From Haliotis rubra (Eukaryota): a stretch of DNA of 64,000 bases. Positions 296 to 64,000 of this stretch are shown here, piece by piece (the stretch's first letter is position 1; every line of letters starts with the position of its first letter). Made by a program: the position numbers and the translations under genes. The stretch spans positions 62,001 to 126,000 of the forward strand of contig NW_025765548.1 in assembly GCF_003918875.1 (NCBI RefSeq), given 5' to 3'. Below the pieces are notes generated by a model. The model saw only the letters and a program-made list of their open reading frames with translations, was not told the DNA's origin and did not search any database.

Positions 296-398
296 CATAG
301 ATCTCCCCCTCACAAATGTTCAGTGCACTAGCACACCCATCATGTCCTCCTGTCCCCTGGCTTTTGATGGTGATATACCTACCGGGGCCGTTACATGT
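296..398 (-). pseudogene. Orphan 3' half of a duplicated FTP C-half exon
   Basis: Translates TCNGPGRYITIKSQGTGGHDGCASALNICEGEIY then a GT donor; 5' half replaced by a (TCAC)n-tailed repeat at about 400-567. Confidence 0.75.
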
Positions 399-399
399 T

Positions 400-567
400 A
401 GTTTTATAACTCTAGCTATGTTAACCTATTTGCTTTACTCTCATTTGTCGACAGGTTTTAAGGAATAAATTTATTATTATTATTGCATATCTTGCTTTAG
501 TCACGGTATGGCTGAAATATTGCCGATGTTACTCTAAATCTCAACTCACTCAATCACTCACTCACTC
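400..567 (+). mobile_element. Family C retroposon 3' fragment with (TCAC)n tail
   Basis: ..ATGGCTGAAATATTGCCGATGT..AACTCACTCA tail shared with 35302-35600 and 47255-47515. Confidence 0.7.
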
Positions 568-1017
568 TATATAAACGTTGACTGATATCGAGTCGAGTGC
601 GCATGAGTTAATCTCGAGGATTTATTATATCCAAACTAAATCATACTGAATAAACCCGAAGATGTGGAGAGTTTTCAATATTTGTTTTGAATCTAGTTTC
701 AGCTGTTTAAAGCGTCCAGTTATTAAACATGTTGTAGTACCAGCTTATTGTATTAATAGAGCGGGTTTCTTCAGCGAGAAAGTCACAATATAAATGATGA
801 AGCATGCATGTATTTTGAATGGAACAAATAGAAACAATCATTTCAAATACCCAGTTATATGAATGAAAATAACCTTTCAACGCTGCCACACACCCAAGAT
901 ATGGGATGTATTCTGGAACGGAACTTACAACGACTTTGCTGTTGAAGGGCAGTAGAGCACTCTTGTATCACCAAGACACGGATTGACGATTACCTGTAAA
1001 TACAATAAATGGCTTAC

Positions 1018-1212
1018 CATAAATCTCCACCTCACAGATGTTCAGTGCATCATCGTGTCCAGGCCCTGCCACCGGGTTCCAGATGGTGACGTATCTGCCG
1101 GTACCGTTACACGTCACGTCAGTTGGGTTGGTGGATGAAGTCGGGAGGGTGGAGCAGATGGCGGAGGCGTCGTTGTTCAGATAGATGTTGGAGTTGACAT
1201 TTCTCCCGTAGT
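1018..1212 (-). CDS. Gene A exon 4 (FTP domain, C-half)
   Basis: GRYVTI...ALNICEVEIY; GTAAGC donor; 195 bp, phase 1-1. Confidence 0.85.
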
Positions 1213-4200
1213 CTTCAGTAAAACAAATACTGTTTCAGATTACGCTACACTATTACACTGTGTTTATATAGTTTCTGTTAACATATTTATCAGATCACAA
1301 AACTATGTTCATGCGATGGACTAATGCATGAGAGGAGAGACTGAGAGGAGACACACCCGATCCAACAATATGTGCTGTCCAGCAGATGCTGTTTAGAATG
1401 ATTACACCAAAACTCGTTTGTTTGCAAATCGTAACGGCACGAAGTTCAAAAATCATCTGAATGTACATGTGCACATGATCACTCTCAATATTTCATTCCT
1501 TCACTGATCAAGACATATGTAATTATAGTCAAGGGTACAAATTCTTAAGTTGTTAATACGTTCTTCTAACAATAAGACCCACTACTGCTGTTATTGAACT
1601 TCCCTTACACCAGACCGCCTCCGTGGTGTAGTGATTTGGGCGTCCGCCCGGAGGGCGGAAGGTCGCGGCTTCGATCCCCGGCCGCGTCTTACTACGAGAC
1701 GTCAAAATATGGTACAATATGCCTGGTGCTCAGCATTAATGGGTACAACAAGAACTGGTCATGTCGGAGTAGGTATAATATGTCTGAGCGGGGTATTCAT
1801 GGTTAACTTTGGCATGGTATATCAGTGAGCCTGCACTATAAACGAGCTTACGTCTGGGCTAGTAGACAAGCAGACACACATACACACGCACCTCACCTCA
1901 CCCATTACAACAGCGGAATGGCCCTGTTTACTTTCAATGTGTAAATAGCTTATAAAACAGAATTGAAATAATAGGCTTGCTAGAAATAAGAACAGGTATC
2001 ACACGTTGAGATATATCAGGTCATGGGGCGTTACTGTAATTGCTATAGTTTGATCATCGGCATATAATGAAAATGTCTCCTCAGATAGAGCAATACCAGT
2101 CTATTGCACCTATCTGTGTTTCCGTCTCTCTTTGTCCGTCACATATTTGTTGTTTAGAACCTTGAGGTGGATTTAATTCTAAGCCGATTCACTGATGTAG
2201 AGTGTTTAAATAGGTTGATAAATATGTTGTCAGCAGAACATGTGTTAAAGAATTACGTAATTGCTTATATGGTGTTGGTTTGTGTTAATTGTTACTTTTT
2301 CATGTTTGAAGTATTATAATGAAAACATAGACTTCAGCAGAGTATCTAAGGTGAGTCTAAGGTGATACATAACAATATAAATAGCATCGTTCTCTCTTGG
2401 ATCACGATGTCTGGATACCTACATCCACGCCTGCTGTAGATCCTGATGTCGTACAGCTGGAAGTCCCGGCCCAGATCCACTGTCCAGTCTGACGGAGATC
2501 CAGCAGCGTGGAAACAGGTTCTACCCTCACCACCAGTGTCACTGTCTCCATCCACAGCATTTGATGGGGCCCAGCCTCCGAACAATCCAGATGTTGTTGA
2601 TGCTGTCTTGTTCAGTGCAATATTTTCTGTGAAGTACAATCATCATGTAACGTTACTGCCCCCTATCTATAGCCTTACGGGTAACAGTCTCCGTACATTT
2701 CAGATGTTGTTGATGCCTCCTTATTCTGTGCAATGTAGGACAATAATCACATCCCCACAAAATTCCATACATATCCCAGTATGTGTTAATGGTGAAAGGT
2801 ATAACATGGGTTTACATGCATGGTGATAGTCTGATTCTAGTTAACAGTATAATGTCAATCACAATCCTGCAACCTATCTGTTGTATTACAAATGTTATAT
2901 ATTGTGTGAGTTAAGGGATCATCATGTAATGATTTGTATCAAAAAGCTGTTTTCACACCGACCAAAGCAGAATATTAAACACATCCAAAATCAGCATTAA
3001 ATATATTAATGGCGCTCACGTTTCTGGCAAAGACCTCCCTCCTTTCTCCATCCCCGATTACAAGAATCAGAACAGGCACCTGTAGTCTCGTCACACGATG
3101 TCCCGCAGTGACAGGAGTAGCTACAGGAGTGTCCAAACCATCCTGGTTCACAGGAACCTGTGGGGAGAAACGGAGAGGTAAGATTCAACACTGAAAGGAG
3201 TAGTTAAAGTCTGCAAACTGACCCAGTGGGATATACGGCAATAGACGTCACATCTGACTGTTTTGATATCTGCATGACCGATTATTCCAAATAAGAAATA
3301 GTTACGCTGAAACTCTTAATCTAATTATCACAGGGAGGTAGTACTGTTCCTGATTGTTCCAGCATTCCGTGTCACCTACATATATAGATTGTCGTCCCAG
3401 TTGTGCACACCTGTAAGACACATATCCACTATGCTATCATGCCTCAATGTCAGACACAGATATCGTTTCTTCCGGTTCCACTGATCCCATCTGATCCCAC
3501 TGATCCTCCACTGATCAAATGATGATCGAGACAGATCCATATCGAAGATAAGGCTGGGTTGGAATCCTTAAGTCGCTCTCCTTACCTATCCTACACTCGG
3601 ACACAACGATACCTTAAGTCGAGGCAAGTATTACGTTTCATTATGTAGTTGAGTATTTTAGGCTTTTAAGGTTGCATGTTTTGTATATCATCCTAAGCAT
3701 TTTATCATCTAACTATCAGATATAGCGAGTCCATGCCAATACCCTCAAAGTTGAACAACAAGGAAGGGAAATAACGTCAAAGTAAACATTACGACCACAT
3801 AACATGTACTAACCCCGCACCATGAATGTGCCTCCTTAATGTGTTCAACTTTTGATAATATATCGAGGAGCTTCAGTGGGATCTGGATGGGAAAGGAGAG
3901 CCAAACTCGCAGCATCCTTTGTATAAGTGAACTTTATCAGTGACTCAAACGATGCAAACTGTTTGTACACGTGACATGGTTTCACAACTTTTGGTTCATC
4001 AAAATGGTAGTTAGAGTAATGTTTTCCTCAAAAACAATTATTCATATCGGGGCGATGGGGTAGCATAGTGGTTAAAACGTTTGCTCGTCACGCTGAAGGC
4101 CCGGGTTCGATTCCCCATATGGGTACAATGTGTGAAGCCCATGTCTTGTGTCCCCCGCCGTGATATTGCTGGAATATTGCTAAAAGCAGCGTAAAACCAT

Positions 4201-7200: not shown

Positions 7201-10179
7201 ACAAGGAAGTAATCTACAGTACTTGTTCCCGTGTGGGATATAAAAGTGAGTTTACCAGATGAATCAGATTCTGTACGACCATTAACTATATACACATTAA
7301 AGAGCTTACAAAGATCTAGAAGCTGGCTTCCATAGGAATTTACAAGTGTATCACATGAACCTCTGGGCCAACTGAAGGAATCCGACTTATAATCATCAGG
7401 AAGGGGTAGATAATCTGCATTATCATCAATAATGAAATCGACTTGGTTACTGGTTCTTGCATTGAAATCACCACTGAGTATAAACAAAGAAGCGTCACTA
7501 AAATCGTGGTAAATATGTAATAACCTTTTTTTCTAATAAGTCTATTCCATTTACTTCTGCGTCATCGTAGAATGAGGATGTTTCCGGTTGAATATATAAG
7601 AATCCAAGGAAGATATCTTCAGTGGCACATTCATCAACGATCTTAAGAAACACACAGTTTTGCCAGTGATCATATATTCTTCTACACTAAGTCGCTAAAT
7701 GTCGCTTAACACAAACAACCAGTCCACCGGAGTGTCTACCATATTTTGACAATTTTATGGGATCACTGATGAAGCACACATATTCACCAAACGTTAGATT
7801 AATGTTAACTGATTCAATCTGCCATGTCTCTATGAGACAAAATATTTCATATTGTTTGCAAAAGTTTATAAAATCAGGGAAAGTTAGTTTTGAGAGTAGA
7901 CCATGCGCATTCCAAGTACAAATATTTGTTAGGGAATGCTGAAAATTAGAAAGGTCCTTTTGCTCAGTATAGTTGGGGCCTCGACCAAAATCCTATCCAG
8001 TTGATTCAGTTGTATTGCTGGAAGGTTCAGAGCTTCTATTATCCCAATGCCTTTGATGTCCAGTCTTTTTGATGTTGTCATTTACTTCATCATAAACGTA
8101 GGTTGCACCATCGATAATCAGTTTGTCATACTTCATAAATGAAACACAGCCCTCATCTCTTGACTTCTTCATGAATGGGAATAGTTTATGACGGATATTC
8201 CTCACTCTCTCGGTAAAGTCTTCAGCCACACGATATATCTTATTACCTTTCAGTAACTTCTTTGCAGCCATAAAAACTTTATCTTGTGCTTGAAATTAGT
8301 AAATTTGATTATCACTGGCCGATTTCCTGCTTTTGAGTGTAGTCTATGTGCTCTTTCGATTCCAACATCATCTGCCGATTCATATGAAAATTCCTCAGAT
8401 AAAAAATGTCGTACCTTTGTTTCGGTTTCTTCCCATGTTTCACCTCTTTTATCATTTAAACCGTGTATAATCAAGTTGTTCCGCCTTGATTGAGCTTCCA
8501 AAGAGTCCACTTTCCGATCGCAATTGGTTTGCTTGGAGCTGGCCAGTCTCAACGTGCAGTTGCCCGACGCATGGATGTTCACCAAACCATGGCTCTGGGA
8601 GAGATATCGCCGGCAGAATGCGTTAGCAGATGCCCCTCGTAGTTGGTGACCTCGAGCGACCACTGCGGCGCGGGATCCCTACATCCGGGTACATCACCTG
8701 CGTCATCGAACAGCTACGGCGACCAGTACCGCTCGACAAATACCCGGATTGAGGAGGCTTTCTGCACAGACCATCAGGAACAGGTTGAGAGAAGCTGGTT
8801 TACGTGCCAGAAGACCTTATTTTGTCCATGTGCTTCGACAACAACATCGTGGACATCGAGTTCAATGGCGCACAACGTTCAGGGCCCCGTTCCTCAAAGC
8901 GATCGTAGCGCTACGACAGTCGTAACTCCCATACTTTAACATAGACTTACTACTGTCGAAGCGCTACGATCGCTTTGAGGAACGGGGCCCAGGCCTGGAA
9001 CCTACCGAATTGGTGTAGAATCTGGTTCAGTGATGAATCACGATTTCTATTGGAGCGACGCGATGGAAGAATGCGGGTGTACAGACGTTGACGTGAACGT
9101 TTCACCGACGCTTGCGTTCCCAAGTGGGCAGATTCGGCCGGGGCGGTGTTATGCTGTGGGGAGTGATCACCTGCCGTAGGAGAAGTGATTTTGGTGATGG
9201 TACTGTGACGAAATCCTACGCCCACACCTCCTTCCAATCATTGATCGCCAGAGGGAGTTGTTTCAACAGGACAATGCCAGGCCCCACACAGCACTTCACA
9301 CTAGAGACTACCTCCAGAACCACAACATCAATGTACTCCCCTGGCCCTCAAGATCACCGGACTTAAACCCGATCGAACATCTGTGGGATGCCCTGGACAG
9401 ACGGGTGCGACGCCGTAACCCTCAGCACAAGACACTTCAGCAACTCGCACAGGCACTACAGGCAGAGTGGGCTGCGATTGGGCAACACGAGATTCATAGA
9501 CGTATTCGTTCGATACCGAGGCGATGCCGTGCAGTCTGGATGCCCACGGTGGTCACAAGAGGTATTGACTTCAGCGCCACCACACGTCTCCATGGGACAC
9601 TCAAACTGACTTTCCTCGAGTTGGTGCCAAAAACGGATAAGTCTGCATTCCCAGTGTGCAATTTCGCTATATTTCATTGACTCATAAAGCCTACAAGATG
9701 TTTCAAAATAAACATAAAAATGCCGTTGAAATTCATATATGCGTTTCTTTTTTGGGAGAGTATATATGACGAACCAACAGCCCTTTACTTCCTTGTATAA
9801 TATATAGAGGTTTGTAAGTTGGTAGAATGCAAGGATGAATCTTTATTGCCGTGAGGTCAATTGTTTTTAAAGTATAGTATCCTCGTGAAGACGATTCATA
9901 CAGTCTCATCGGATAGTACATGTAGACCCTTCACTTTATTGGTATTATCCCGTGAGCTGATATTCACAATCAAATAGTGGACGCCTGCATATAACACTCT
10001 CTAAAGAAATTTTGTTCAACGTTAATATGACATTCTCGTTTCGAAGAAAACAATAGCTTACTTGCAGTGATGTACACATTCTCGAGGAAGGCATGAAAAC
10101 TTCGGCTGATGTACTCACCCGATGTTAGCTGTATCCATCGAAGTAAGACAACCGCTACGAATATCCTGACACCCGCCAT
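1018..10179 (-). CDS. Gene A, 5' part (continues off the left edge): EGF + F-type lectin (FTP) receptor, paralog of gene B, probably an EGF/lectin receptor-type PTP
   Basis: Four phase-1 GT-AG exons in frame without stops. 10119-10179: MAGVRIFVAVVLLRWIQLTS, signal peptide. 3020-3157: EGF, SCEPGWFGHSCSYSCHCGTSCDETTGACSDSCNRGW. 2423-2626: NIALNKTAST...NAVDG...CFH...WTVDLG...IRIYSR. 1018-1212: ...VTCNGTGRYVTIW...ALNICEVEIY. The first three exon sizes (61/138/204) equal those of gene B. Confidence 0.85.
1614..1890 (+). mobile_element. tRNA-derived SINE
   Basis: Box A-like GGTGTAGTG and box B-like TTCGATCCC head, followed by a non-tRNA body and a CA-rich tail. Confidence 0.6.
2423..2626 (-). CDS. 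Gene A exon 3 (FTP/fucolectin domain, N-half)
   Basis: NIALNK...AVDG...CFH...WTVDLG...IYSR motifs; CAG acceptor, GTAGGT donor. Confidence 0.9.
3020..3157 (-). CDS. Gene A exon 2 (EGF-like repeat)
   Basis: CAG acceptor, GTGAG donor, Cys-rich MEGF-type repeat. Confidence 0.9.
3485..3892. mobile_element. Putative MITE
   Basis: Imperfect terminal inverted repeat TCCCATCTGATCCCACTGATCCTC / GAGGAGCTTCAGTGGGATCTGGATGGGA. Confidence 0.45.
4049..4213 (+). mobile_element. tRNA-derived SINE family A (about 160 bp, TCAC tail)
   Basis: GGGGTAGCATAGTGGTTAA..GGTTCGATTCCCC head; multiple copies in window; imperfect TSD CAATTAT. Confidence 0.85.
5083..6067 (-). mobile_element. Tc1-like DNA transposon relic, 5'-truncated
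   Basis: Frameshifted transposase fragments DRPRTGRPRVTTRRQDR, WRTVLFTDKSRY, GGASIMVWGG; TA-flanked terminus at 5083. Confidence 0.85.
6068..8520 (-). mobile_element. Non-LTR retrotransposon fragment (ORF1 C-terminus, APE, RT N-terminus), truncated at both ends
   Basis: LEAQSRRNNLIIHGL..IERAHR (ORF1); GDFNAR, TVDYF, SDHMP (APE); KSPGDDGIP, NYRGISL, AGFRPGYST (RT). Confidence 0.9.
8521..9760 (+). mobile_element. Tc1-like DNA transposon relic, 5'-truncated
   Basis: WFSDESRF, GGVMLWG, FQQDNARPH, WPSRSPDLNPIEHLW (DD34E); TA-flanked end at 9760. Confidence 0.9.
8883..8989. mobile_element. Palindromic MITE with CAG TSD (PIF/Harbinger-like)
   Basis: 30-bp perfect TIR GGCCCCGTTCCTCAAAGCGATCGTAGCGCT flanked by CAG..CAG, inserted in the Tc1. 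Confidence 0.8.
10119..10179 (-). CDS. Gene A exon 1 (signal peptide)
   Basis: ATG at 10179, hydrophobic MAGVRIFVAVVLLRWIQLTS, GTGAGT donor; near-identical to 44106-44166. Confidence 0.85.
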
Positions 10180-10191
10180 GTTAAGCAACGC

Positions 10192-21679: not shown

Positions 21680-22179
21680 CTATTACAAATACATTTATGT
21701 TAACTGTGTATATCATCCTGATCTGCACACACGATGCGACTATGCATCTTATCAACAAAGTGATATGAGGAGTAGCTACGGTAGACACAATATGTTACGT
21801 TAATATGAAGGGGAAAATAATGGTTAAGTTTGAATTCATTTAAGTGAGAACATAATTAATGTTAAGATCTTATGTAACAAGCATATCAAAAAGTTAACCT
21901 TTATTCAGCCATATTGAGGACATTGAAGAAAGTATCAAACCTACTGCCACCGTGGTAATATGATCTCCAGGAAGACCTGCTGAAAATATAGATTAACATT
22001 AACTGCCTCTTTATTGGATCCTCGTGTTTGTGCAGTTTTAGAATGTGAAAATGAACAAGGCTCCTGCTTAAAATGTGTTCAATTGCATTCCACGAAAAGT
22101 CAAGTATAGTACAGTGTAACTGGAACTGCCTTCAAATTACATCCTCGCTGATGTCAATAAGGCACCACTGCTCAAAGTA

Positions 22180-22656: not shown

Positions 22657-22793
22657 TATGCGTGATTCTGACTAGCATGAGTTTGAGACAATATGGCCGA
22701 CAACAGGTAGACAGGTGAAAATCTGTCAATGGACTGACCACATATATATGCAGAGTGAATAGTGCATCAAATCCAAAACTGTTAAAATCGAAA

Positions 22794-23820: not shown

Positions 23821-23862
23821 GACTGCGGCCCGGCTCTGATTGACAGCGAAATTGACATTGAA

Positions 23863-27327: not shown

Positions 27328-27450
27328 AAGAGACATGTATATATATACCTATGTATATGTTGAAACCATATTGTCTATATATCATATACCACTTTGCATT
27401 TATTGTACACGGGCCAATGTCCCCTATATACCGAAATAAATTCTTCTTCT

Positions 27451-28068: not shown

Positions 28069-28118
<50 letters not shown>

Positions 28119-46230: not shown

Positions 46231-46616
46231 AAGAACTTGTAGTCTATGCAATGACTATTACTATTTTGTCATTACGCAACTTCTAAAGATCTCTATCAAA
46301 CAATTCACCTCTCACAAACATATGTTCACACAGAAGTTAGGAATGACCGTTCCTCTAGGGTCAGTCCAAACTTTACAACATCAGAGTCCAACAATGACTA
46401 TGATATGTATAGAAGATGACTCACTGACTGAGTTTGGTTTTACGCCGCTTTTAGCACCTTTAGGCATCTGACAACACATACTTGCATATCTGTCATATTG
46501 GAAGGGACTTTTGCTTCCAATGGGGCGACTACATACATCTGTACGTTCTCTGATGTTAAAAAAATATATTTACATTGGGAAATTAAACTTATTCACATAT
46601 TGTATGACATGTCCAG

Positions 46617-49469: not shown

Positions 49470-51155
49470 TCAGATGTTGGCATAGGTATTTGAAGGATCT
49501 GTTCTCAGAATACACTGCAGGGCAAAGTCATGAAACATCTGCACATCATTCTGGAAAAAACAAAACAAAATCAGGACATTGAAAGAAGTTTGATCCCCAA
49601 GACAGCTTACGCGTTTCCTCGATGGAAATGATTCATATTGGATCAGTGATGGTTTTGATGGCCATAGACAACATCACATTTCACCACGATTAGAGACAAT
49701 GTCAAAGGCTATATCGCATTACGCCATGAGTACCCATAGTGTCGTACAAGCCTTCAACATTAGTTATGGCAAGGATACAAAAATCACTGTCAACAAATTT
49801 GGAACAGTCTGGGACTTAGAAAATCTAATATTAATTTCTATTTTCGACAGACAGTATGTAAACGGCACCCAAAATTCTGATTCTGTTCTTTTTTCTATTT
49901 GTTTGTGGAGCGTTGGGATAGCCTAGGGGTTAAAGTGTTTTCGTGACAAGCCGAAGACCCGGGTTCGATTCCCCACATGGGTACAATGTGTGATGCCCAT
50001 TTCTGGTGTCACCCGCCTTGATATTGCTGAAAGACGGTGTAAAACTAAAACCTCACTCACTCACTCTGTTTGTTTGGTTTGTTCAAAATGTTTTGAATTG
50101 ATCATCTTAGGTTATTCGATAGTACCGCTCATTTAATAAATATTACTGATATTACCAATGCCACGTCATCGTCAGAGATACTGGTTGTTATATGTTGTCC
50201 GCATTATGTTTGCAGATATATAATAGAACCAACGTCGATAGACTCAGAAAAAAAACAAATGTTGGAAAGAATGGCAAGGGAGAATAATTTTGAAATATGT
50301 CAGATGTGATTTAGATCATATTATATTGTGACTGATGATCTATGGTAAATAGAACTATATTGTCCCTACCTCGTTGAACTGAAGGTCAGGGCAACATCTG
50401 AGGAATGTTCTCACATGGCCGATGACGTCAACACAAGTGTCCTCACGAATACCGGAGAGAATATTCCCCATAATGCAGAAAGAGACGGCAAGCTTTCTGT
50501 CGGTTTCACTGCAATATAATAATTTCAGTAAATTAGTTACTGGCTTTTACATACAATTCCTTCATCACAAAACATTTTTTCCAATAAAGTGACAATTTTA
50601 CCTGTGAAGAACAACAACTGGGTGAGTCTGTGTTGATATTTCTTGCAGTTGGGGGTGATTCAACAAATAGGATGTCACAATTTCTGTAGTCAAGTGTGCA
50701 TTAACTCTGATCATCTTCACCTGGCGAGGCCTGTCTGTCTGTGTACACAAATATTTATCTATTATTGGCCATTCATGAATGCAGTAATAATACTAATAAT
50801 AATAATGACCTCAGCCTCATGGTGTCTGCCATGTAATTTATTGAAAGAGATATTTAAAAAAAACAAAACAAAAAAACAACTTACTAAGCCAAACCAAACT
50901 AAGTATAAAATTAACAGAGGCCAGTTCTCTTATCCTTAATGTTATATCTTCTTTCATTAGTTTGTCATACTTGGTTAATCACGAAAATATGTTAGCTTTC
51001 ACGAGTATTAATAATGTAACCTGGTGGTTTATTACCTTTGTGGATAGCTGCAAGTTGTTCGTGGTAAGGTCTGTTGATAGGCTGGTTTCACTCGTGGTTG
51101 TCACAGTAATCTCACCATGTGTCTTTGACCTCCCCTCTGCTTGGACTAAACCCAT
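49470..51155 (-). pseudogene. Locus D: orphan block of four PTP D2 / terminal exons of another paralog
   Basis: Phase-compatible exons 51036-51155, 50602-50738 (..HPVVVLHS), 50370-50508 (ETDRKLAVSFCIMGNI..CVDVIGHVR), 49470-49550 (..DPSNTYANI*); sizes and phases mirror the gene B D2 exons; AATAAA on the minus strand at about 48978. Confidence 0.75.
49905..50066 (+). mobile_element. SINE family A copy
   Basis: Homologous to 46066-46230. Confidence 0.85.
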
Positions 51156-53317: not shown

Positions 53318-56300
53318 CTTGTCTCTACACTATTAATTTGAAATTATTTACTATTTATAATGAAAGTCACTACAGATAGGTCAAAATTACCTTCACATGT
53401 TCCTGCTGACCATCCTTGGTCATTCGTTATACGGTCTCCAGACTCATCATCAGCTTTGCTGAAAAAACAACAACATTAACACGTTACTTTTCGTTGCATT
53501 TCTCCATTCATTCATTTGAGTTTTTAAAAAACCCCAAACAATTGCAGTGACATTTATACCAACAAGCAAACTACAGATTTATCACTTTAGGTTATGCAAT
53601 CAGTAAGTGAACGGCCTGACATAAACATCCTGATGAATGGAGTTTAGTAATCTCATGTGACATAACCTTGGAGTAATTACGGTATTGTAAAATCAAGGGG
53701 TCAGTTTGACTGCAATTTCACACAGGTGTGAAGTTAAGATTTATTTGGTCCTATTTGAAATCATGATTAAGTTACCGGTTATTCAAATCCATTTGCAAAT
53801 GCAACTTTAGTATGGTTCATTTTGTGAAAATGTATCTAGGGAAGCATAATAATAAAATATTCAAAGTGAAATTATGTCTATATTTCGTAGTACCCTAAAC
53901 ACATACCTTCAATAAGAGAGGGTGATGTTTTCCTCCAGGAGTAGTCGTGACACATGTTTCCTCACAATAGCCTAAATGAATAAAACAAATCCATTAATAT
54001 ATAATCTATTTGCTATATTGTTCAAATTGTAGTATATTTTTAGATAGACTTATTTTACTTCACCATCGTTTAAAAATAGTTCGAGCAAAACTGCTTATAC
54101 AGTCATCGGACTTAAATATACGTCAGTCGGCAAAATTCTCATAGACTTGCATGCTATTTTAGTGTAGCTGTGTAATTTTCATTAATTCCGTTTTCCATAT
54201 TTGGTTGTCAAATTTTGCAGGTTGTTAGGAAATCATCTTAGTCACAGATACATAATTTCCCGCATTGTAGTTACAATTCTTTCCCCATAGACCGCCATGT
54301 TAAAAAATTGCCATAACCATGACACGCACTGAATTGAAAATAAAACGGAAATTATGTCTTTGTAGCTGAGATGATTCATGACCCATGTGCAAAATATGAA
54401 CAATATCAAACGGATATTAAATAAATTCAAGACATATGTCTAGCTGCACCAAATTAACATGTAAGTCGAATAATGCATAGGGACGAATACCCCTATGGCC
54501 AGTGGCTGTAATTCGACAGATTAGCTTGTTTACCAATCCGGATTTCTGTAAGTTAAGTAAATAATAATTCATTAAGCGTTATTTGACAACAAAATAACTT
54601 GGTCTTACCTGACAGGGTCGTGGTACTGCGAGTTTTTCGCAGACATTCCATCTCTCTTTTCCAGGTAGCGAATTCTCTCTTCCAGTGCTTTGAGGGAAAC
54701 TGAGGCGGCTATGAAAATGGCGTCTCGCAAAGACTCACGGGAAAAACACTTTGTTGTTGTTTTTTAATCTTAATCTAACATTACAGTTTGACAATATCTT
54801 TCCGCGTTATACAACAAAAACAACATACACTATACACCTAAAATGTCAGCTGTGTGTTTTTATAATGATTTAGGTAGTCTCGCGTGGACGTGATCCGGTC
54901 GCCATTGTTTTATTTGTTTACATTGCCAACATCAAAGGGACCCGTGAAAGGTGGAAATGAGCAGATTGAATGTGAGTACCCAAAGTGACAACAGTTGGCT
55001 GTTATGGGCTTAAGGGTCTTTTCATCGCATTATGGGCACTAATTGCTCCTCCTCAGTGTCAAACATCAACATGTAGGCCTAGAGATAATTAACAGTGAAT
55101 AAATCTGAAAACATATTCTTGTTACTTTAAAAGTTCTGATCGAGCTTCATGGGTCCTACTCATGAGAACTTGTGTTAGTAGCAAATAGGTGATTTTCAAA
55201 ACCCTGTCAGGAGTAGGCAATATACGAAAATATTTCTGCTGGACGTAAAACTTCATCATGTAAGTAATTTACCTATTGAGCTCAAAACATGCAAGTGTAT
55301 TAGACATGCTTATATCATGTTCATTCTTTTCAGTTCTACACCTAGATCTACGTATACTATTCCCATGTATTATAAGTTTACTTATTACTAGTTTATATGT
55401 AATGTCAGCTCAATATATCTGAGTGAGTGAGTTTAGTATTACACCGCACTCAGCAATATTCCAGCTATATGGCGGTATTTATCCAATTATACCAGTTCTT
55501 CTATTTTAGTGTTAACATATTTTATTCAAAACAAATTGGACCAGGATTGGTAAACAATGGCTTATTTGAATACCTCTCCATTCCATAGATACACTAACAA
55601 AACAAATAATAAATAGTATGCAACATGATAGGAAAGCAAGCAACTCATCTAATTTATCATTTTATAACCATTAAAACAATTATTACATATACTTTACACT
55701 CATAGCTTTGTGTAATAATTTGTGTAATCAATTATTAAACCTCTTAACCTTACAATGCATTGACACAAGTCACGTTTCTAAAAGAATATTTTTTTTCAAT
55801 TTACAGATACGTATTGTGGATCCACTGACTTGTTGGAGATTGACAAGAGGCTTGGTTTGGTAATCATTTATAGTTACACCATATCATGCTCCTTATTTCA
55901 TTAAAGGAAATCTTAAAACAATATATTCCAGGAGTAATACAGTTGAACAGAACCTTGTTGACATTTCTATTGGATTAATTGTGAATTGATGTGCACATAT
56001 TACAGATAAAATTCGGCGTAACGGCATTCATATATACATGGCTGACACTGCGTTCTCCCCAACTCATGGAGTCAACTGCTACACCGTGACAGGGAACAGG
56101 GACGGGACAAACATACCTGATGCTTTGAAGGCTAGGTGTTCTGGTAGAGGGCGCTAGTCCTGTACACTACCACTGTAAACAACGAAATCAACAACGTAAA
56201 CGTACCTATCCTGGATTTCTGTGATGTCGAGGACTGAAATGTTACATAAGCTTTTACATGCAAACGGGCAGGTAAAAAATGCTTTCTCAGCATCATTGTT

Positions 56301-57059
56301 GTCAAATATACTTCCCATCAAAATTTTAGACTCACTCAAAGCACTCACCATATGGTATGTATTTATATATGGTTACATCAAATATTGATTTCTCCAGTAA
56401 CTTGGGGGGAACCAAGTGCAGGCCTTATGCAGATGAATTGTACGAGGATCATGCATCAAATTGCTGAAAAGCATGTGCAAATATCGTGCATGGGAACAGC
56501 TGCGTTATGGTGTAAAGTTTTGTTAAGAATTCGCCAGTTTTCACTGATTTTTATCATTTATTGAACTCATGACAATAATTTTTTTCAACGTTACGAATGT
56601 GTTTTACAATGCATCAGTTCATTTGTAAACAATACCTTTAAACTGAATGGTATATTTTGTAAAATTTAGTTTAGAACAGTTGACTGAAGTAAGTGGCTAT
56701 ATTTACACTAGTGAGTCTAACCTTTTGATAGGGAGTATATGTTAGTTTGTTAGTTATGAAAATTCCCCCTGTAGGTATGATTTACGCGCCATTACTACAG
56801 TGCGGCAATACATGTATGCTTGAATTACTTTTACAATAGGGACTCGCGCCTTCAATCAACTAATCACGCCATGCCTTTAATAGTATGTGGCCCTGGTACT
56901 TTCGGTGCTGACTGTGACGACTACTGCCACTGTGACGTCAATGTGTGTGACTACGTCAGCGGCGTCTGTCCAAGTGGAGTCTGTCTGCCAGGCTTTCAAA
57001 CAGAAAGGTGTGACACAGGTGGGTAGTTTTGTTCATGTAACATATGTTATAGATGTCAT

Positions 57060-57548
57060 GGGGCATGGTGGGCGAGCTGGCTAAGGCGCCAGACTAGTGA
57101 TCCAGCGAGCTTGAGGTGTCCGGATCGAGCCCACCTGTGACTGGGTGTAAATACCTTGGAGTCAGACGCTTTCAGTGTTGTCGCAATCCTCAGTGTACTT
57201 TACACAACCCTGTGGACTTAAAAGAACCCACGAATCCGTTGGTATATGTCCAGATGGTGGTCACGTGAATACGTGCAAACGCCCAATTGCGGGGACAGCA
57301 ACAAGCAGTAAACTTGGACAAAGTACTGTGACCATGTTTCCAAGTCCACCAAGCTGTGAATGGGTACCTCGCAAGGATGGGAAAGCAGCAATAACTCGGT
57401 GCGCCTGCAACAGTTGTATGATCCCCGGGGAGCTGAGATTGATAATACGATGAGCCGTTGAGATTGACATCCAGTGATTGAGGGGAAAAAAATATCAGCG
57501 CCTTGAGCGTGTACTAGTTGCGTGGATATGTGCGCTTTACGAATATCC
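57060..57548 (+). mobile_element. Long tRNA-derived SINE with CORE-like segment and L2-like tail
   Basis: tRNA-like head; CTTGGACAAAG..GTCCACCAAGCTGTGAATGGGTACC; tail AGCGCCTTGAGC..GCGCTTTAC. Confidence 0.6.
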
Positions 57549-58170
57549 TATGATAATGTCATTGATACGACAGAGTTACTTCCGTTTGGCTGTTTTCCGA
57601 ACCTAGTTTACAAGTTCGCTTTCTATCGGCTGAACTGATTCAGCTAAACCAATCACGCCTAGTCTTACTACGCTCCAGCAATACTTGTCTAATGGCGGTT
57701 AACTAAAATGTTACGAACATTTCTCGTCTTGCCGCAGGACTGGCTACTTTTTTGGACAGCCAGTCTTTGCACAAATAAGATTTTTAAACTATTTATACAC
57801 TGATAATACATATAATTTCAGACTTGAACAAGTTACAAGTTTAAAAGTTTTTTACAAATATTCAAAAGAATCAAAGGCAGGAGGTAACTGGGATTAGAAA
57901 TATGGGTTGTTTCACTGAACATGAAAAACGTTATGTTTTCAGCTTGTATCTATGGCAGTTATGGAACAAACTGCAATCAGAAGTGTTCAGACAGGAATTG
58001 CAAAGGGCGACAACTCTAGCTGTGACAGATCCACGGGGGAGTGTGTTGGCGGCTGCAAGGCAGGGTGGAATGGCATAGACTGCACACAGAGTAAGAACCC
58101 GAGTTTAATGAAAGTATTTCCAATAAATTTAACCTTATCGATCAGGCTGGTGTGTTCTCCAAGTACCTCA

Positions 58171-58337
58171 AGTGAGTGAGGGAGTATGGTTTTACGTCGC
58201 TTTTAGCAATATTCCAGGAATATTAAGACGGGGGACAACAGAAACGGGCTTCACACATTGTACCCATGTGAGGAATCGAACCCGGGTCTTCGGTGAGACG
58301 AGTGAACGCTTTAACCACTCGGCCGCCCTACTGCCCC
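58171..58337 (-). mobile_element. SINE family A copy
   Basis: Reverse-oriented full copy. Confidence 0.85.
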
Positions 58338-58702
58338 TCAAGTACATCAAACGCGACAAGCACCCAACCTCAGATGAAGTGTTTATAATCAGATTTTACA
58401 TGTTCCCTCTCTGCTATTGTGTTGATCAAATCGTTTCAGAGTGCGTATTTACCTACGGAGACAACTGTGCTCGCCTGTGCTCTGCCAGAAACTGCAGTGG
58501 AACGTCGTCATCCAGCTGTGATCACGTGACAGGGAAGTGTGACGGAGGCTGTAAGCCCGGCTGGAAGGGCAATGACTGTAGAACAGGTTAGGTTCGATCT
58601 TTGGTCTTGGATAAAATCCTTTCTAGTCTACCCACTTTATCACACTGTTGATGCAAATTGAAAAAAAGCTAAAGGAGACATCAGTAGAAGCAGGACTCAA
58701 CT

Positions 58703-58902
58703 GTGAGTGTGTGAGTTTACGCAGCCCTCAGCAATATTCCAGCAATATGGCAGCGGGCTGTAAATAATCGAGTCTGTGCCAGACAATCCAGCATGAGCAT
58801 ACGATGACATGTGTCAACCAAGTCACCACCCGATCACGTTAGTCGCCTCTTACGACAAGCATGGGTTGCTGAAGATCAATTCTAACCCGGATCTTCACGG
58901 GT
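58703..58902 (-). mobile_element. SINE-like family B copy
   Basis: Reverse complement of the 20917 family. Confidence 0.8.
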
Positions 58903-58986
58903 CAAACCATCTGTTAGTATGTGAACAGTATTTCAGCCATATAAAGGCTAATGCAAGTTAGGAATTGATAACACATAAAGGGTCTA

Positions 58987-59350
58987 AAACGTGTCGACAC
59001 ATAACAGTAAAGGAACGTCACATGTATATAGGTAGACATACATACTGGCAGGTTACAATATTGTTGGGCCCATTTGCAAGATGCTCGTGGAATAAGTATG
59101 TAAAGAAAAGACACCTCCACCCCCCCTCCCCACCAAGAGGGACACCCACCCCACCCAGACTCACACACCCACACAACCAAAAAACGAAAAACGTGTCGAC
59201 ACATAACAGTAAAGGAACGTCACATGTATAAAGGTAGACATACATACTGGCAGGTTACAATGTTGGGCATATTTGCAAGATGCCCGTGGAATAAGTATGT
59301 AAAGAGAAGACACCTTCACCCCCACCCCACCCAGACACACATAACCAAAA
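58987..59350. repeat. Direct tandem duplication of about 200 bp
   Basis: AAAACGTGTCGACACATAACAGTAAAGGAACG.. occurs at 58987 and 59188. Confidence 0.9.
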
Positions 59351-60577
59351 AAAAAGAAAAAGACCTAACCTAACCAAAGCTATTACTAAGGCAAATGTAG
59401 ACTACGTTCTCCAGCTCCAACAACACCATGAGCATATATTTACACGGGTCACTGTCTCGTAGGTATGTTAGATGGAGTTCTCAATGAGGTGAGCATATCC
59501 TTCCCTGTCCCCCACAAACAAGTCCAAAGGCAAACCAAGTAAATCATGTATACTTACATGGAAGGCTAAAGGCAGTTTCTTTACATGCAGTGTGCACCCA
59601 GGGGTTAGAATACGGAGCTGACTGTGTGGGTAACTGCTGTGCCCGGATGTGTGAAGGAGGGTCGGGCATCTGTCCCAAAGATACAGGACGGTGTGACTCT
59701 GGCTGTGAGTCGGGGGTGGCAGGGTGAAGACTGTTCACAGGGTAAGAGTCAACAACAATTTGTATCAAACCTGCTACGGGTTCTTAAAGAAAGCATCGAA
59801 ACTATGTTTGGTTTGACTAGGAACTTGTTCATGCAATGCATTTATTCCAAAATATATGTCAGATTGTAACAGTAATAATATTCAGACTAAAAGTAGTTAT
59901 AATGTGTTAAACACAAATAAACGTTTCCTTACATACGGCTTCTGTCACGTCAGACACGGCTACTTGGAACAATGTGAAGATCTAACATTGCGGGAATCAC
60001 GAAACATGAAGGATGCTAAAAAAGTGGATGATTGCTTTTCTACTGATTGATCAGTGTGGTAAAGTCCACTTCAAGTCCACTGAAAATCAAAAGGTGTCAC
60101 TTATAAATATCCAGTGGTCACCGTTTACCGTACTTTGACGGCATAGGACATGTTTAATAATATTTACTACTTTCTCTTACCCATCTCCATAATTTACATA
60201 TTTGTTTAAATATTCCCAACTGCAAGCTAACACAACATTTAATAACTTGCTATCCTCGACACAAATTCCTACATTCAGAGTACATTTTGATAGGTCGGTA
60301 CATGTATGATGTGCTAAATGAATATCATAGAACACATTGCAATAACAATATCCGCATCTTTCGTGTTACAAATGTAATGTGTAGATGTTTATTCACCAGT
60401 CTGTAGTCTTGGTTCATTCGGTGTCAACTGTACTGGGGAATGTGGAGAATGTCGTGACGCCAGCGATTGTCACAATGTCAACGGAACCTGCCTCATGGCA
60501 TGCAGCGATGGGTGGACTCACCACACATGTACACAAAGTAAAATGCTCAATATTTCTTCAGTCCTTCAATCACACTG

Positions 60578-60735: not shown

Positions 60736-61664
60736 TTCAATCACATGACCCACCATGGCATTTATTACATCGTGTAATAAGATGTATATAGTTTTACGAC
60801 ATTCGTGGGGTCGCTTTCGCCTCTGGTACAGCTGTGCCTTTCGTAAGTGAGTGTGTAAGAAAAGGTCTGTCGTGCATCTGACTTGTTCACAGACAGACCT
60901 AGCTTGTCATTAAATCATCATTTGTGTAGTAATTGGAACCATCACGTACTATAACATGATTACATGCTAATAGGCGGACATTTTCCCCGTGCATGGCAAG
61001 GGTCAATATTCATGTATATGACAAGCGTCAATATCATTTCTTCAAACTACTATCCAAATTACTTTACAGTCATCGAATAACCTCGAAATACTTGCAAACA
61101 TGTTCAACTAATTAGAGTTGATATTCAGTTACTGCCAGCTGAACATAGCACATACTCTATAATTTAGCATATCCTTCAGTAACACTGTCACCACTATTTT
61201 CCTTTCAAATGAAAATATTCCATTGACAATATGGTTATCGTAGGACACGTGTCATCCGACTCACACGAAAACTATGTTTCTCTACATTCTGATAACCAGC
61301 AGCGCAGTGAAGAAGTGAATAAGCAAGGAATGCCTTGTTCTTCTAAGACTATGGTGTTATTAATTAATCTTTAATGTCTGCAACTGTGTACAAATGTGTT
61401 ATATAATGCTGAAGATAGATGTTCTTGCTTCTCTTCTGGTTGAAACACCATCGTCCAATGTAGGCGTCATAGCGGGCTCTGTAGGTTCCAGCTTTCTTGT
61501 AGCAGCCATTGTTGTTACGGTCGTTGTCTTACTCAGGTACGAAGGACATCTTGATATAGTATATGAATTGTGACAATTAATAATGCTTTCACTTGACTAT
61601 TTATACTAGCGAAACATCGTGGATAATGCCATATAATTTTGGTCTTTGTCACAGTTCACACGAC

Positions 61665-61876
61665 ACTTTAGAATTGATCTTCAGTAATACGTGCTTGTCA
61701 TAAGAGGCGACTAACGGGTCGGGTGGTCAGACTCGCTGACTTGGTTGACACATGGCATCGTATCCCAATTGCGCAGATCGATGCTCATGCTGATGATCAC
61801 TGGATTGTCTGGTCCCGACGGGATTATTTACAGACCGCCGCCATGCAGCTGAAATATTGAATATCACTCACTCACT
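61665..61876 (+). mobile_element. SINE-like family B copy
   Basis: Homologous to 20917-21162. Confidence 0.8.
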
Positions 61877-62834
61877 AACTGCTAATGAAAGCATGCACGA
61901 GTGTGCATGGATACGACTTTCCTAGTCATACATTATTAATTTGAATCATAAGGGGTTATGTGCCTCGTAGGTACCTCTAGATTGTATGTATAATCAAACA
62001 AAGTGTGATTAAGTGATTAATGTTTTGAAGCCGCACCAATACCAAGCAATATATCTGGCCCATATCAAACATCACATGGATTTTTAGACAATAAGGTAAC
62101 GGTTAGCTATTCTGGTTCTACAATGAGGCCATTACATGTGTGGGTTATACAATACCATGTTTGTTTCTCTATGCACACAATAAATTGTACTAATGCATTT
62201 CGTTCTTATACGAAGACGGCGGAGATATCCACACTCAACGAAAACAAATAAACATGCAGATATATCCCAAGAGCAAACATGTCCGTATAAAGGAATAACA
62301 GAGAATCACATTGAACTGTCATGGATATGAGTAATTATGTGGGTTATTCATCATTGCTTAAACCAGATCTGGTATACTTTATGACTTATTTGTTATATTA
62401 TGATGCAACGTTTCGGTATACATTCTTTTTGTACAATGGCATAGAATCTAAACCGAAATGTCAAATCATAACATTATAAAGAAGTTGTCATCTATAAAGC
62501 ATCTTCCGTTTCTTATCAGTTGAAAACTAAACTGCAATTCAAAAGATCATATGCCTTAGTACATGTAGAAGTTGCAATCAACACCACCAGCACATTCCCT
62601 TCAGTCATATGTTATATATTGTATATATGTATATAATTGTGTCGATTGACTTTAATGAGTTAAAAAATTCACTTCAAATGTGGACTACCTATTGGACCAG
62701 GCTCTGACTGAAGATAAGGTCGATGTGTTTGGTTGTGTCTCAAAGATGAGAGACCAGAGAAAGGGCATGATACAGACAAAGGTAAGAGTTTCATCTCAAT
62801 GTAAATGTTCATTTTTGCACCGATGTTCTATATA

Positions 62835-63516
62835 TAGTATGACCAGAAATTATTGAGAATTTTAGGAATATGTTTAACTGGATTTCTAGTATAAACAACC
62901 TTGACCAGTTATCAAGTGTTTGGTTTCATTCAAGAGAGACAACTCCGTTAATCCTTTTTCATTAGTTTGTGAAGAGTTACCCCCCTTTGTTTACTTGCTA
63001 TCAGACGACAATTTCAGTGATCCTCAGTACGGATGATTTAGAGAAGAGGAAGTTTATTTTAGAGTATTATAACAAGGACATCAGATCAGCTAAAGTGATT
63101 TCAAGTAGAACAGGCATCCCTTTGTCAACTGTTTATCGTGTTTTGAAACATATTGCAAATGGATATGGCATTGAGCACCAGAGAGGCACAGATATGCCCA
63201 GAAAATTGACTGTCGTTGACAGGAGGCAGCTTGGTATTGGGACTTATGAAGGAAAGGGGCAATAAGAAAAATCTGACAAATATTGCTGAAATGAAAGAAG
63301 AGGTGGTCCGATATTGGAACAGCTAGACCCACGACTTTCTAACTTCTTTGAACAGTAGTATGCCCCGCCGCATTGAAGCCTGCATTGCTGCCCATTGTGA
63401 CTTGACAAAATACAAACTGTTCACCTGTCTTTGAATCTGGAGTTATGTTATGCTAATATTCACATTTAATACGTGAGTTACAATCTTTAAATTCTTAATG
63501 ATTTCTGGTTGTACTG
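62835..63516 (+). mobile_element. Internally deleted Tc1/mariner element
   Basis: TIRs TAGTATGACCAGAAATTATTGAGAA / TTCTTAATGATTTCTGGTTGTACTG, TA flanks; HTH ISSRTGIPLSTVYRVLK and C-terminal SMPRRIEACIAA. Confidence 0.8.
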
Positions 63517-64000
63517 TAAGAATGCATATGAAGCAAACAGTCCACAGAAGAACTTTATGTCTCACATTTGCATAAACTCACGAATGTCAACGGTCGTTTT
63601 ATTATTACTTCAAGACCAGTACAAATGTGTTTACATGACCTTGCAAGAGGCTCTGGAGTTTTGAAACACAACCATGGACATGCAGGAGTTCAATCAAAAT
63701 CGAAGTGGGAACAGAACCTTCAAGATGGCACGCATAGAACCCACACAGTTAATACAGGTAGAGGCAAAACATTGAAATAATATACTACGGAAAATTCCCT
63801 GAAGTATTATGATAATTATAAAATTCTTTGTTTCCTGTACTGTAAAAAACGTATACCTTTCTCAATATCTTTTAGATCCTGAATGCGAAAAGAGAGTTCC
63901 CAAGAAAAGGTAAGCAAATGTAGCGTTCCCTTGTAAATACATACCACTTGGTTTAACAGTTCTATTCCGTTCCATACCATCGATGCAGAAAACCTGAAGT

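What the first reader, a model, noticed from the sequence alone, without database searches (positions are those of the whole stretch)
296..63909. Birth-and-death cluster of F-type lectin / EGF-stalk / tyrosine-phosphatase receptors (candidate variable immune-recognition system)
Seen: five related loci or fragments in 64 kb (A-E), with matching exon sizes and phases where they overlap. The most complete (B) reads SP-EGF-FTP-5xEGF-TM-PTP D1-D2; most copies are damaged. Established: FTP domains bind fucosylated glycans, and polymorphic transmembrane clusters with EGF, carbohydrate-binding and PTP domains have been linked to parasite resistance in the snail Biomphalaria. Inference: a rapidly turning-over glycan-sensing receptor family coupled directly to phosphotyrosine signalling.
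Basis: partly seen in the sequence, partly recalled or inferred. Interest (0 to 1): 0.85.

Follow-up and report, generated by a model that had tools for sequence, protein, structure and literature searches.

The report
Abalone lectin-EGF phosphatase receptor gene array
This stretch of blacklip abalone DNA holds a row of duplicated genes for cell-surface receptors that join a fucose-type lectin and EGF repeats to a tyrosine phosphatase, but every copy lying fully inside the window is broken, and the receptor type is already annotated in abalones and described in snails.

Summary
The window is Haliotis rubra contig QXJH01001590.1, positions 62001-126000. It carries five related loci.

- A (minus strand): only its first four exons lie in the window, and they are open.
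- B (minus strand): the whole gene.
- C: one EGF exon.
- D: three D2 exons.
- E (plus strand): a partial gene.

The lectin is a true F-type lectin by PDB profile and by fold. The stalk consists of one-EGF exons, all in phase 1-1. D1 is a classical receptor phosphatase domain. The tail is a shortened D2 fold with no catalytic cysteine.

B is a pseudogene. It has four frame-breaking indels, and a 4.8-kb LINE replaces 1.5 kb that held the catalytic-cysteine exons. E has frameshifts, a stop codon and large deletions. An intact near-copy of B, here called B', lies on another contig.

RNA contigs cover only the exons and show the juxtamembrane exon spliced to the first phosphatase exon. RefSeq models in this region are chimeras of neighbouring paralogs.

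The same architecture (MEGF + galactose-binding-like domain + tandem PTP, clustered and polymorphic) was published for the Biomphalaria sudanica locus SudRes1 in 2025. Dozens of such proteins are annotated in Haliotis. This is therefore a new member of a known kind. An immune role remains an untested inference. The scan has noted similar clusters elsewhere in this genome.

The parts
10119..10179 (-). Locus A exon 1: signal peptide (MAGVRIFVAVVLLRWIQLTS, phase-1 donor G|GTGAGT)
   Evidence: tblastn; translation and donor site
3020..3157 (-). Locus A exon 2: EGF1 (138 nt, phase 1-1, AG/GT)
2423..2626 (-). Locus A exon 3: N-terminal half of the F-type lectin domain (CFH and YSR of the fucose triad)
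   Evidence: Pfam
1018..1212 (-). Locus A exon 4: C-terminal half of the F-type lectin domain, open frame. The rest of A (EGF2 onward, TM, D1 with VHCSAGIGRTG, D2) lies left of the window.
261..404 (-). Partial duplicate of the FTP-C exon inside A's next intron
   Evidence: self-blastn; tblastn (P0003 residues 166-201, 80%)
44106..44166 (-). Locus B exon 1: signal peptide
40012..40149 (-). Locus B exon 2: EGF1
39521..39724 (-). Locus B exon 3: FTP-N
   Evidence: Pfam
36909..37116 (-). Locus B exon 4: FTP-C with a +1 frameshift near 36975
32440..35026 (-). Locus B exons 5-9: EGF2 34895-35026, EGF3 34309-34454 (-1 frameshift at 34396), EGF4 33642-33785, EGF5 33372-33509, EGF6 32440-32577
   Evidence: reads
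31175..31504 (-). Locus B exons 10-11: transmembrane exon 31378-31504 and basic stop-transfer exon 31175-31248
   Evidence: RNA contig identical to 31378-31499
30198..30581 (-). Locus B exon 12: juxtamembrane region (51-nt in-frame insertion and a +1 frameshift near 30243)
   Evidence: RNA contigs and the splice joint 30198|29702
27452..29702 (-). Locus B exons 13-18: N-terminal two thirds of PTP D1. Exons at 29615-29702, 29405-29481, 28875-28911, 28120-28220, 27681-27793 (13-nt deletion) and 27452-27547 (WPD exon, cut off after ...EFMWR).
22679..27450 (+). LINE (ORF1, APE endonuclease, RT; (TTC)n 3' tail) antisense to B. It replaces 1545 bp that in A and B' hold the rest of exon 18 and exons 19-21 (VHCSAGIGRTG, Q loop).
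19386..21980 (-). Locus B exons 22-27: linker exon 21945-21980 and the degenerate D2 pseudophosphatase (21543-21662, 21219-21335, 20259-20395, 19617-19749, 19386-19457 with stop)
   Evidence: fold
46613..46741 (+). Locus C: lone EGF exon of the P0197/P0201 subfamily
49470..51155 (-). Locus D: last D2 exons (about 50994-51155, 50370-50750, 49473-49559) of the same subfamily as C. Annotated in RefSeq as a 158-aa product.
56011..56231 (+). Locus E: FTP-C exon with a frameshift near 56154. No SP, EGF1 or FTP-N exons were found upstream.
56883..60536 (+). Locus E EGF exons: 56883-57017, 57939-58089 (frameshift near 58005), 58439-58603, 59590-59791 (frame change near 59715), 60384-60536
61436..62279 (+). 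Locus E transmembrane exon (61436-61549) and basic exon (62187-62279)
62680..63908 (+). Locus E end of D1 and start of D2. Exon 19 is 5'-truncated at 62680 (it starts at VDYLLDQ and lacks the AGxGRTG segment). Exon 63599-63760 has an in-frame stop. A further piece lies at 63876-63908. The juxtamembrane exon and D1 exons 13-18 are absent.

Best explanation
The window is a segment of a tandem array of paralogous receptor-type tyrosine phosphatase genes in the blacklip abalone. An intact family member reads, from the N terminus: signal peptide, one EGF, one F-type (fucose-type) lectin domain split over two exons, five MEGF-type EGF repeats (one exon each, all phase 1-1), a single transmembrane helix, a variable acidic juxtamembrane region, an active classical PTP domain (D1), and a shortened D2 with no catalytic cysteine.

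The array grows by gene-sized segmental duplication and decays by small indels, retrotransposon insertion with deletion, and rearrangement. Three subfamilies lie in this 64 kb: A/B, C/D and E. B, C, D and E are pseudogenes or fragments. Only A's 5' exons are open here. B's working counterpart, B', sits on another contig.

Inferred mechanism for intact members (not shown here): the membrane-distal lectin, held out on the EGF stalk, binds fucosylated or related glycans on another cell, microbe or matrix. Ligand-driven clustering or dimerisation then changes the access of D1 to phosphotyrosine substrates such as Src-family kinases, with D2 acting as a regulatory pseudo-domain. I put a role in non-self or altered-self recognition by haemocytes at roughly one in three.
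For: Identity of the DNA:
- Window 1-54166 is 100% identical to H. rubra QXJH01001590.1.

Family size:
- About 90 relatives, mostly Haliotis proteins carrying PF00754/PF22633 plus PF00102, and a further ~25 not listed.
- Most lie on a few chromosomes in the chromosome-level assemblies.

Lectin:
- The profile hits MsaFBP32 at 4.5e-47 and eel agglutinin at 2.5e-22.
- The AF2 model has pLDDT 89.6, and the top 11 Foldseek hits are all F-type lectins.
- The His/Arg/Arg triad is present.

Phosphatase domains:
- D1 is closest to RPTP alpha, sigma, LAR and epsilon.
- The tail adopts a PTP fold, with PTP-epsilon D2 as best match at TM 0.77.

Exon phases.

Duplication:
- A and B are collinear.
- B and B' are 88-97% identical over about 27 kb, but their flanks are only 69-77% identical.
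- dS is 0.07 for B/B' and 0.18-0.32 for A/B' and A/B.

Decay:
- Indels and the LINE-associated deletion in B.
- Defects in E.

Expression and splicing:
- The RNA-like run covers only exon bins, and one 1089-nt contig joins window 30198 to 29702.
- Contigs with 0-2 mismatches to B occur at places where B' differs from B by 6.
Against: - No ligand, substrate, tissue or challenge data were available, so the function is inferred from the domains and from a snail study.
- The assembly is a Nanopore/Illumina hybrid (PMC6774278), so some 1-2-nt indels could be consensus errors. At 34395 most short-read contigs and the RNA contig carry the extra base, although these may come from B'.
- All dN/dS estimates are below 1, so diversifying selection is not demonstrated.
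- The disulfide-forming CC of fish F-lectins is absent, so sugar specificity may differ.
- Sequence orthology to the Biomphalaria genes was not tested.
Confidence: 0.8

Rival explanations
1. The damage is largely an artefact. The 147-kb contig is a poorly polished or alternative-haplotype copy of the region at the start of contig QXJH01000191.1, and B and B' are two alleles of one intact gene.
For: - The assembly is a hybrid Nanopore meta-assembly with haplotig purging, and heterozygosity is 1.3-1.4%.
- Several indels sit in or next to short homopolymers.
- At 34395 the frame-restoring base is in 70-100% of short-read contig depth.
- B and B' are collinear at 92-97% identity.
Against: - The 13-nt deletion, the 4.8-kb LINE with its 1.5-kb deletion, E's truncated exon and E's nonsense codon are not polishing errors.
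- Short-read contigs with the window's own version exist at both sites that were checked. At 30241/2 the window's form holds about 63% of the depth in X1 and all of it in X2, but only a minority in X3. At 34395 it holds about 28-30% in X1 and X2 and none in X3.
- dS of 0.068 is about five times the genome's heterozygosity.
- The flanks drop to 69-77% identity, and the neighbouring genes differ.
- A third contig holds another copy at 90% or more.
Confidence: 0.12
2. The family is real but serves ordinary cell adhesion, development or gamete recognition rather than immune recognition. Its expansion and decay then reflect the relaxed copy-number control typical of mollusc receptor families.
For: - MEGF-type EGF stalks and RPTPs of the alpha, LAR and sigma kind act in adhesion and neural development (established knowledge; D1 similarity).
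- F-lectin repeats form oyster sperm bindin (my own knowledge, not checked here).
- dN/dS is below 1 throughout.
- The abalone virus-selection scan does not mention these genes.
Against: - The same architecture sits in a snail locus associated with parasite resistance, with gene and domain presence/absence between haplotypes.
- The ectodomain evolves faster than D1 (0.70 against 0.20, a rough estimate).
Confidence: 0.3
3. The array is part of a paired-receptor system. Near-identical lectin-EGF ectodomains are coupled either to a phosphatase or to a short tyrosine-motif tail, giving opposing signals from one ligand.
For: - Many relatives of 450-690 aa carry lectin plus EGF plus TM but no PTP.
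- Copies X1 and X2 next to B', and copy Z next to A, show ectodomain exons only within the DNA read.
- Earlier notes of the scan raise this idea for other clusters in this genome.
Against: - No tail-type gene lies in the window.
- X1, X2 and Z were not followed to their 3' ends.
- The earlier follow-up found that the idea fitted one gene pair at best.
Confidence: 0.12

Closest known systems
MEGF / galactose-binding-like-domain receptor PTPs of the Biomphalaria sudanica SudRes1 region (Nat Commun 2025, PMC12297450)
   Same: Both are single-pass receptors with extracellular EGF repeats plus a galactose-binding-like lectin domain and intracellular tandem PTP domains. Both have many paralogs clustered on one chromosome, homologous contigs that are hard to assemble, and loss of genes or domains between copies.
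   Different: The host is a different gastropod lineage (vetigastropod against heterobranch), and sequence orthology was not tested. The lectin is shown here to be specifically F-type. No adjacent antistasin genes were seen. There is no genetic link to any resistance trait in abalone.
F-type lectins (eel agglutinin 1K12, striped bass FBP32 3CQO, pneumococcal SpX, lectinolysin)
   Same: Strong sequence-profile and fold matches. The His-Arg-Arg fucose-binding triad and the N-x-A...AVDG...W-x-VDL...CEVE-x-Y framework are conserved.
   Different: The lectin here is a single domain embedded in a transmembrane receptor, where the known ones are soluble lectins or toxin modules. The adjacent Cys-Cys of the fish lectins is missing, and the loops differ, so specificity is unknown.
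Vertebrate receptor PTPs of the alpha/epsilon (R4) and LAR/sigma (R2A) types
   Same: D1 carries all PTP motifs in intact paralogs (KNRF, DYINAS, WPD, VHCSAGIGRTG, QTKEQY). It has tandem D1-D2 organisation, and the best PDB matches are of these types.
   Different: The ectodomain is lectin plus EGF, where R4 has a short glycosylated stub and R2A has Ig/FNIII repeats. D2 is about 60 residues shorter and has no catalytic cysteine.
MEGF10 / Draper / SREC-type multiple-EGF scavenger and engulfment receptors
   Same: The same kind of compact EGF repeat, one per phase-1 exon. RefSeq names many family members 'MEGF10/11' or 'draper-like'.
   Different: No EMI domain was found. The cytoplasmic part is a phosphatase, where those receptors have an NPxY/ITAM-type tail. 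The names come from automatic annotation only.

Membership tests
F-type lectin (FTP) domain | Sequence-profile similarity to experimentally solved F-type lectins | tested here: met
   Profile of 28 family domains: 3CQO 4.5e-47, 1K12 2.5e-22, 3LE0 4e-18, 2J1R 2e-17
F-type lectin (FTP) domain | F-lectin beta-sandwich fold | tested here: met
   AF2 model pLDDT 89.6. The top 11 Foldseek PDB hits are all F-type lectins, TM 0.75-0.83.
F-type lectin (FTP) domain | His / Arg / Arg fucose-binding triad | tested here: met
   Aligned to H52, R79 and R86 of 1K12 in the profile alignment. Present in window copy A (CFH, YSR, YYGR), and His and the first Arg are in B's exon 3.
F-type lectin (FTP) domain | Binds L-fucose or fucosylated glycans | not testable with these tools
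   Needs recombinant protein and a glycan array
Classical receptor-type protein tyrosine phosphatase | D1 with the catalytic VHCSAGxGRTG loop, WPD loop and Q loop | tested here: not met
   Not met by any copy inside the window. B ends inside the WPD exon. E lacks exons 13-18 and the start of exon 19. The feature is met by paralog B' and by A's exons outside the window.
Classical receptor-type protein tyrosine phosphatase | Signal peptide, single transmembrane helix, PTP on the cytoplasmic side | tested here: met
   Signal-peptide and TM exons in B, and TM exon in E. The order is fixed by collinearity with RefSeq models.
Classical receptor-type protein tyrosine phosphatase | Second, membrane-distal PTP domain (D2) | tested here: met
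   Pfam misses the A/B-type tail. It aligns to P0193's D2 at 1e-10 and folds as a PTP domain, with PTP-epsilon D2 as best match. It has no catalytic Cys.
MEGF/GBD receptor PTPs of Biomphalaria SudRes1 | Architecture: EGF repeats + galactose-binding-like domain + TM + tandem PTP, in paralog clusters | tested here: met
   Domain order and clustering shown. Paper description.
MEGF/GBD receptor PTPs of Biomphalaria SudRes1 | Sequence orthology with the snail genes | not tested
   No Biomphalaria RPTP appeared among the listed hits. The searches were word-limited and swamped by LAR-type PTPs.
MEGF/GBD receptor PTPs of Biomphalaria SudRes1 | Haplotype variation linked to pathogen resistance | not testable with these tools
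   Needs population and challenge data for abalone

The most novel reading that the evidence does not exclude
Every ectodomain exon is a phase 1-1 cassette and the paralogs lie head to tail. Transcription could therefore run through neighbouring copies and splice lectin and EGF exons of one paralog onto the stalk and phosphatase of the next. That would give combinatorial receptor diversity from a germline array. The two RefSeq models examined (P0003 = B 5' exons + A 3' exons; P0243 = X1 + X2 + B') would then reflect real chimeric messages, and transcribed 'pseudogenes' such as B would serve as exon donors.
Probability: 0.07. Interest if true: 0.75.

Novelty: new member of a known kind. Interest (0 to 1): 0.33.

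Why it matters
Abalone fisheries and farms suffer from viral and bacterial disease, and mollusc immune recognition is poorly understood. A large, clustered and decaying family of lectin-tipped receptor phosphatases is a reasonable candidate for glycan-based recognition, and it parallels a snail locus tied to schistosome resistance.

The practical lessons from this window are narrower.
- The copies here are mostly dead.
- The automatic gene models in these arrays are chimeras and should not be used as they stand.
- The F-type nature of the 'galactose-binding-like' domain gives a concrete ligand class to test.

Tried and rejected
- Motif scans for PTP and EGF signatures in six-frame segments found only a few exons. 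Homology mapping was needed instead.
- Pfam on single exons gave only weak F5_F8_type_C hits, and nothing for the EGF or PTP pieces.
- The look-up of P0152's gene failed because only the longest isoform is on record. This was solved through the cluster members.
- The locus of P0250 could not be fetched because the gene model spans 229 kb.
- A search seeded from the PTP half of P0193 was swamped by LAR-type phosphatases and did not reveal Biomphalaria relatives.
- The first dN/dS estimate was contaminated by HSPs that run through introns. It was redone on mapped exons, but EGF exon pairing in A remains ambiguous.
- Rfam found nothing in the window.
- The abalone virus-selection paper mentions neither these genes nor these contigs. 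Literature searches for an F-type lectin plus PTP architecture found no dedicated paper.
- Rejected: D is the inverted 3' end of E. D's best references are P0192, P0207 and P0197, whereas E's are P0193 and P0252. P0193 matches D at only 28%.
- Rejected: B and B' are simple alleles, because the flanks are only 69-77% identical.
Full report
**What the DNA is.** The window has no N runs and about 40% G+C, and it is full of short exon-like open frames and transposon ORFs. A search with one lectin exon found a 765-aa protein that is 97% identical to it, P0003 (Haliotis rubra LOC124271261). Its locus, L001, is 100% identical to window 1-54166 in reverse. The window is therefore H. rubra assembly GCA_003918875.1, contig QXJH01001590.1, positions 62001-126000. 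L001 also supplied 32.5 kb to the left of the window.

**The five loci.** Mapping about 100 family proteins onto the window by tblastn gave the following.
- A (minus strand): signal peptide, EGF1, FTP-N and FTP-C exons lie in the window, and the rest lies to the left.
- B (minus strand, 19386-44166): the most complete copy.
- C (plus strand): one EGF exon at 46613-46741.
- D (minus strand, 49470-51155): the last D2 exons.
- E (plus strand, 56011-63908): runs off the right end of the window.

A and B are collinear through exons and introns at 70-94% nucleotide identity, which marks a gene-sized tandem duplication. C and D share their best references (P0197, P0201, P0196, P0192). E's best references are different (P0193, P0252). 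Three subfamilies are therefore present, and D belongs with C and not with E.

**Exon structure.** I threaded RefSeq protein P0243 exactly onto its own locus, L002 (another H. rubra contig). This gave 27 exons with canonical splice sites. All ectodomain exons are phase 1-1: EGF1 138 nt, FTP-N 201, FTP-C 207, and EGF2-6 at 132, 147, 144, 138 and 138 nt.

**Domains.**
- The lectin domain only just reaches the Pfam thresholds for F5_F8_type_C and F5_F8_type_C_2. A profile of 28 family domains, however, hits the solved F-type lectins far ahead of anything else: FBP32 at 4.5e-47 and eel agglutinin at 2.5e-22. An AlphaFold model (pLDDT 89.6) has F-type lectins as its 11 best PDB matches.
- The His/Arg/Arg fucose triad is conserved in the family consensus and in window copy A. 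The Cys-Cys pair of the fish lectins is absent.
- D1 is a classical receptor PTP domain, closest to RPTP alpha, sigma, LAR and epsilon.
- Pfam does not recognise the A/B-type C-terminal 210 residues. They align to the weakly recognised D2 of P0193 and fold as a PTP domain, with the PTP-epsilon D2 crystal structure as best match. No catalytic cysteine is present, so this is a D2 pseudophosphatase.

**State of the copies.** L002 carries B', a copy collinear with window 46456-19209 at 88-97% identity. It has no LINE and has all D1 exons. Relative to B', locus B has these defects.
- A +1 insertion in FTP-C, near 36975.
- A -1 deletion in EGF3, at 34396.
- A +1 insertion in the juxtamembrane exon, near 30243.
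- A 13-nt deletion in D1 exon 17.
- A 4772-bp LINE at 22679-27450, antisense to the gene, with an APE endonuclease and RT and a (TTC)n tail. It abuts the WPD exon directly after ...EFMWR. It replaces 1545 bp that in A and B' encode the rest of that exon and exons 19-21, including VHCSAGIGRTG and the Q loop.

Locus E has these defects.
- Frameshifts near 56154, 58005 and 59715.
- An in-frame stop in exon 63599-63760.
- No SP, EGF1 or FTP-N exons.
- No juxtamembrane exon and no D1 exons 13-18.
- An exon 19 cut off at 62680.

A's four exons inside the window are open. A's D1 and D2 exons outside the window keep the catalytic motif but carry four small frame-breaking indels relative to B', plus a net +3 length change (+2 and +1) in exon 25. 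The RefSeq model evades the indels it covers with odd splice choices.

**Are the small indels real?** The assembly is a Nanopore/Illumina hybrid with haplotig purging (PMC6774278), so caution is needed. Short-read contigs from three DNA runs were laid on 29590-35585.
- At 34395 the frame-restoring base is in 72%, 70% and 100% of the depth.
- At 30241/2 the one-base-shorter form takes 37% of the depth in X1, 0% in X2 and most of the depth (about 80%) in X3.
- B' carries exactly these two variants. The simplest reading is that both B-type and B'-type sequences are present in these animals.

The window's versions are thus supported at both sites, but not proven. The LINE/deletion, the 13-nt deletion, and E's truncation and stop codon are not the kind of error that polishing leaves.

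**Paralogs or alleles?** B and B' differ at dS 0.068, about five times the genome's heterozygosity. Their flanks fall to 69-77% identity, their neighbours differ, and a third contig carries another copy at 90% or more. I read them as paralogs, possibly homogenised by gene conversion.

**Expression and splicing.** One small run (X7) covers only the bins that contain exons and none of the pure-intron bins, so it behaves as RNA. A 1089-nt contig joins window 30198 directly to 29702, which are exactly my exon 12 and exon 13 boundaries. That ties the juxtamembrane exon to the first PTP exon. Three contigs match B with 0-2 mismatches. In two of those intervals B' differs from B by 6, and in the third it aligns only in part, with 3 differences. 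A B-type copy is therefore transcribed in that sample. The spliced contig itself is B'-like. The run is from a coded organism that may not be the reference animal.

**Gene models.** P0003 begins with B's SP, EGF1 and FTP-N exons and continues with A's exons 38 kb further on. P0243/P0152 takes exons from three neighbouring copies, X1, X2 and B'. Such in-frame chimeras are possible because of the phase 1-1 exons. Whether they are real messages is unknown.

**Evolution.** Rough Nei-Gojobori estimates are as follows.
- A/B: dS 0.32.
- A/B': dS 0.175, with dN/dS 0.20 in D1 and 0.70 in the EGF stalk.
- B/B': dN/dS 0.37.

This fits old and recent duplications, a faster-evolving ectodomain and relaxed constraint. 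It does not show positive selection.

**Known context.** About 90 relatives were listed, mostly Haliotis proteins named 'receptor-type tyrosine-protein phosphatase epsilon/alpha/T-like', 'MEGF10/11' or 'uncharacterized'. There are also members in Patella, Gigantopelta, oysters, Mya, Mactra and Mytilus. A 2025 paper describes the same architecture in Biomphalaria sudanica: MEGF + galactose-binding-like domain + tandem PTP. That species has 17 such genes clustered on one chromosome, with structural differences between schistosome-resistant and schistosome-susceptible haplotypes (PMC12297450). The scan's own earlier notes report similar clusters elsewhere in this genome.

**Verdict.** The immune role is only an analogy. 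The thing itself is a new member of a known kind and is largely a gene graveyard within this window.

Noticed in passing
window 44166 down to 1018 and beyond (L001 10001-76682); L002 10001-79745: RefSeq/Gnomon models LOC124271261 (P0003) and LOC124274485 (P0243/P0152) are chimeras that join exons of two or three adjacent paralogs over 67-70 kb. The model for P0250 spans 229 kb.
   Followed up: yes
window 4049-4214, 46066-46231, 49907-50072, 58170-58342 (inverted), 60580-60731 (inverted): A SINE-like repeat of about 166 nt in five copies at 72-86% identity, scattered through introns and spacers. Rfam gave no match.
   Followed up: partly
window 5207-5918 (-), 9112-9680 (+), 11030-11365 (+), 37840-38124 (-): Decayed Tc1/mariner-type transposase remnants. 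Pfam HTH_Tnp_Tc3_2 and DDE_3 hits were obtained for two of the pieces.
   Followed up: partly
window 5947-8663 (-) and 41061-42192 (-): Further non-LTR retrotransposon fragments (endonuclease-RT, zf-RVT) inside the first introns of A and B.
   Followed up: partly
window 25957-26093: The ORF2 of the LINE that disrupts B is itself split into two overlapping frames, so that element is also no longer intact.
   Followed up: no
window 28067-28171: A (CA/TG)n microsatellite directly beside B's D1 exon 16, which makes long spurious Cys/Val and His/Thr open frames.
   Followed up: no
window 43272-43366 (-): ARAGORN calls a 95-nt tRNA-Thr(TGT)-like sequence in B's first intron. Rfam does not support it, so it may be a SINE head or a chance hit.
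   Followed up: no
L001 76618-86682 (left of the window) and L002 10001-49700: Further family copies (Z next to A; X1 and X2 next to B') show only lectin and EGF exons in the DNA read. Model P0023 goes from EGF3 straight into a TM helix and a short tail. These may be the phosphatase-less 'MEGF10-like' branch of the family.
   Followed up: partly
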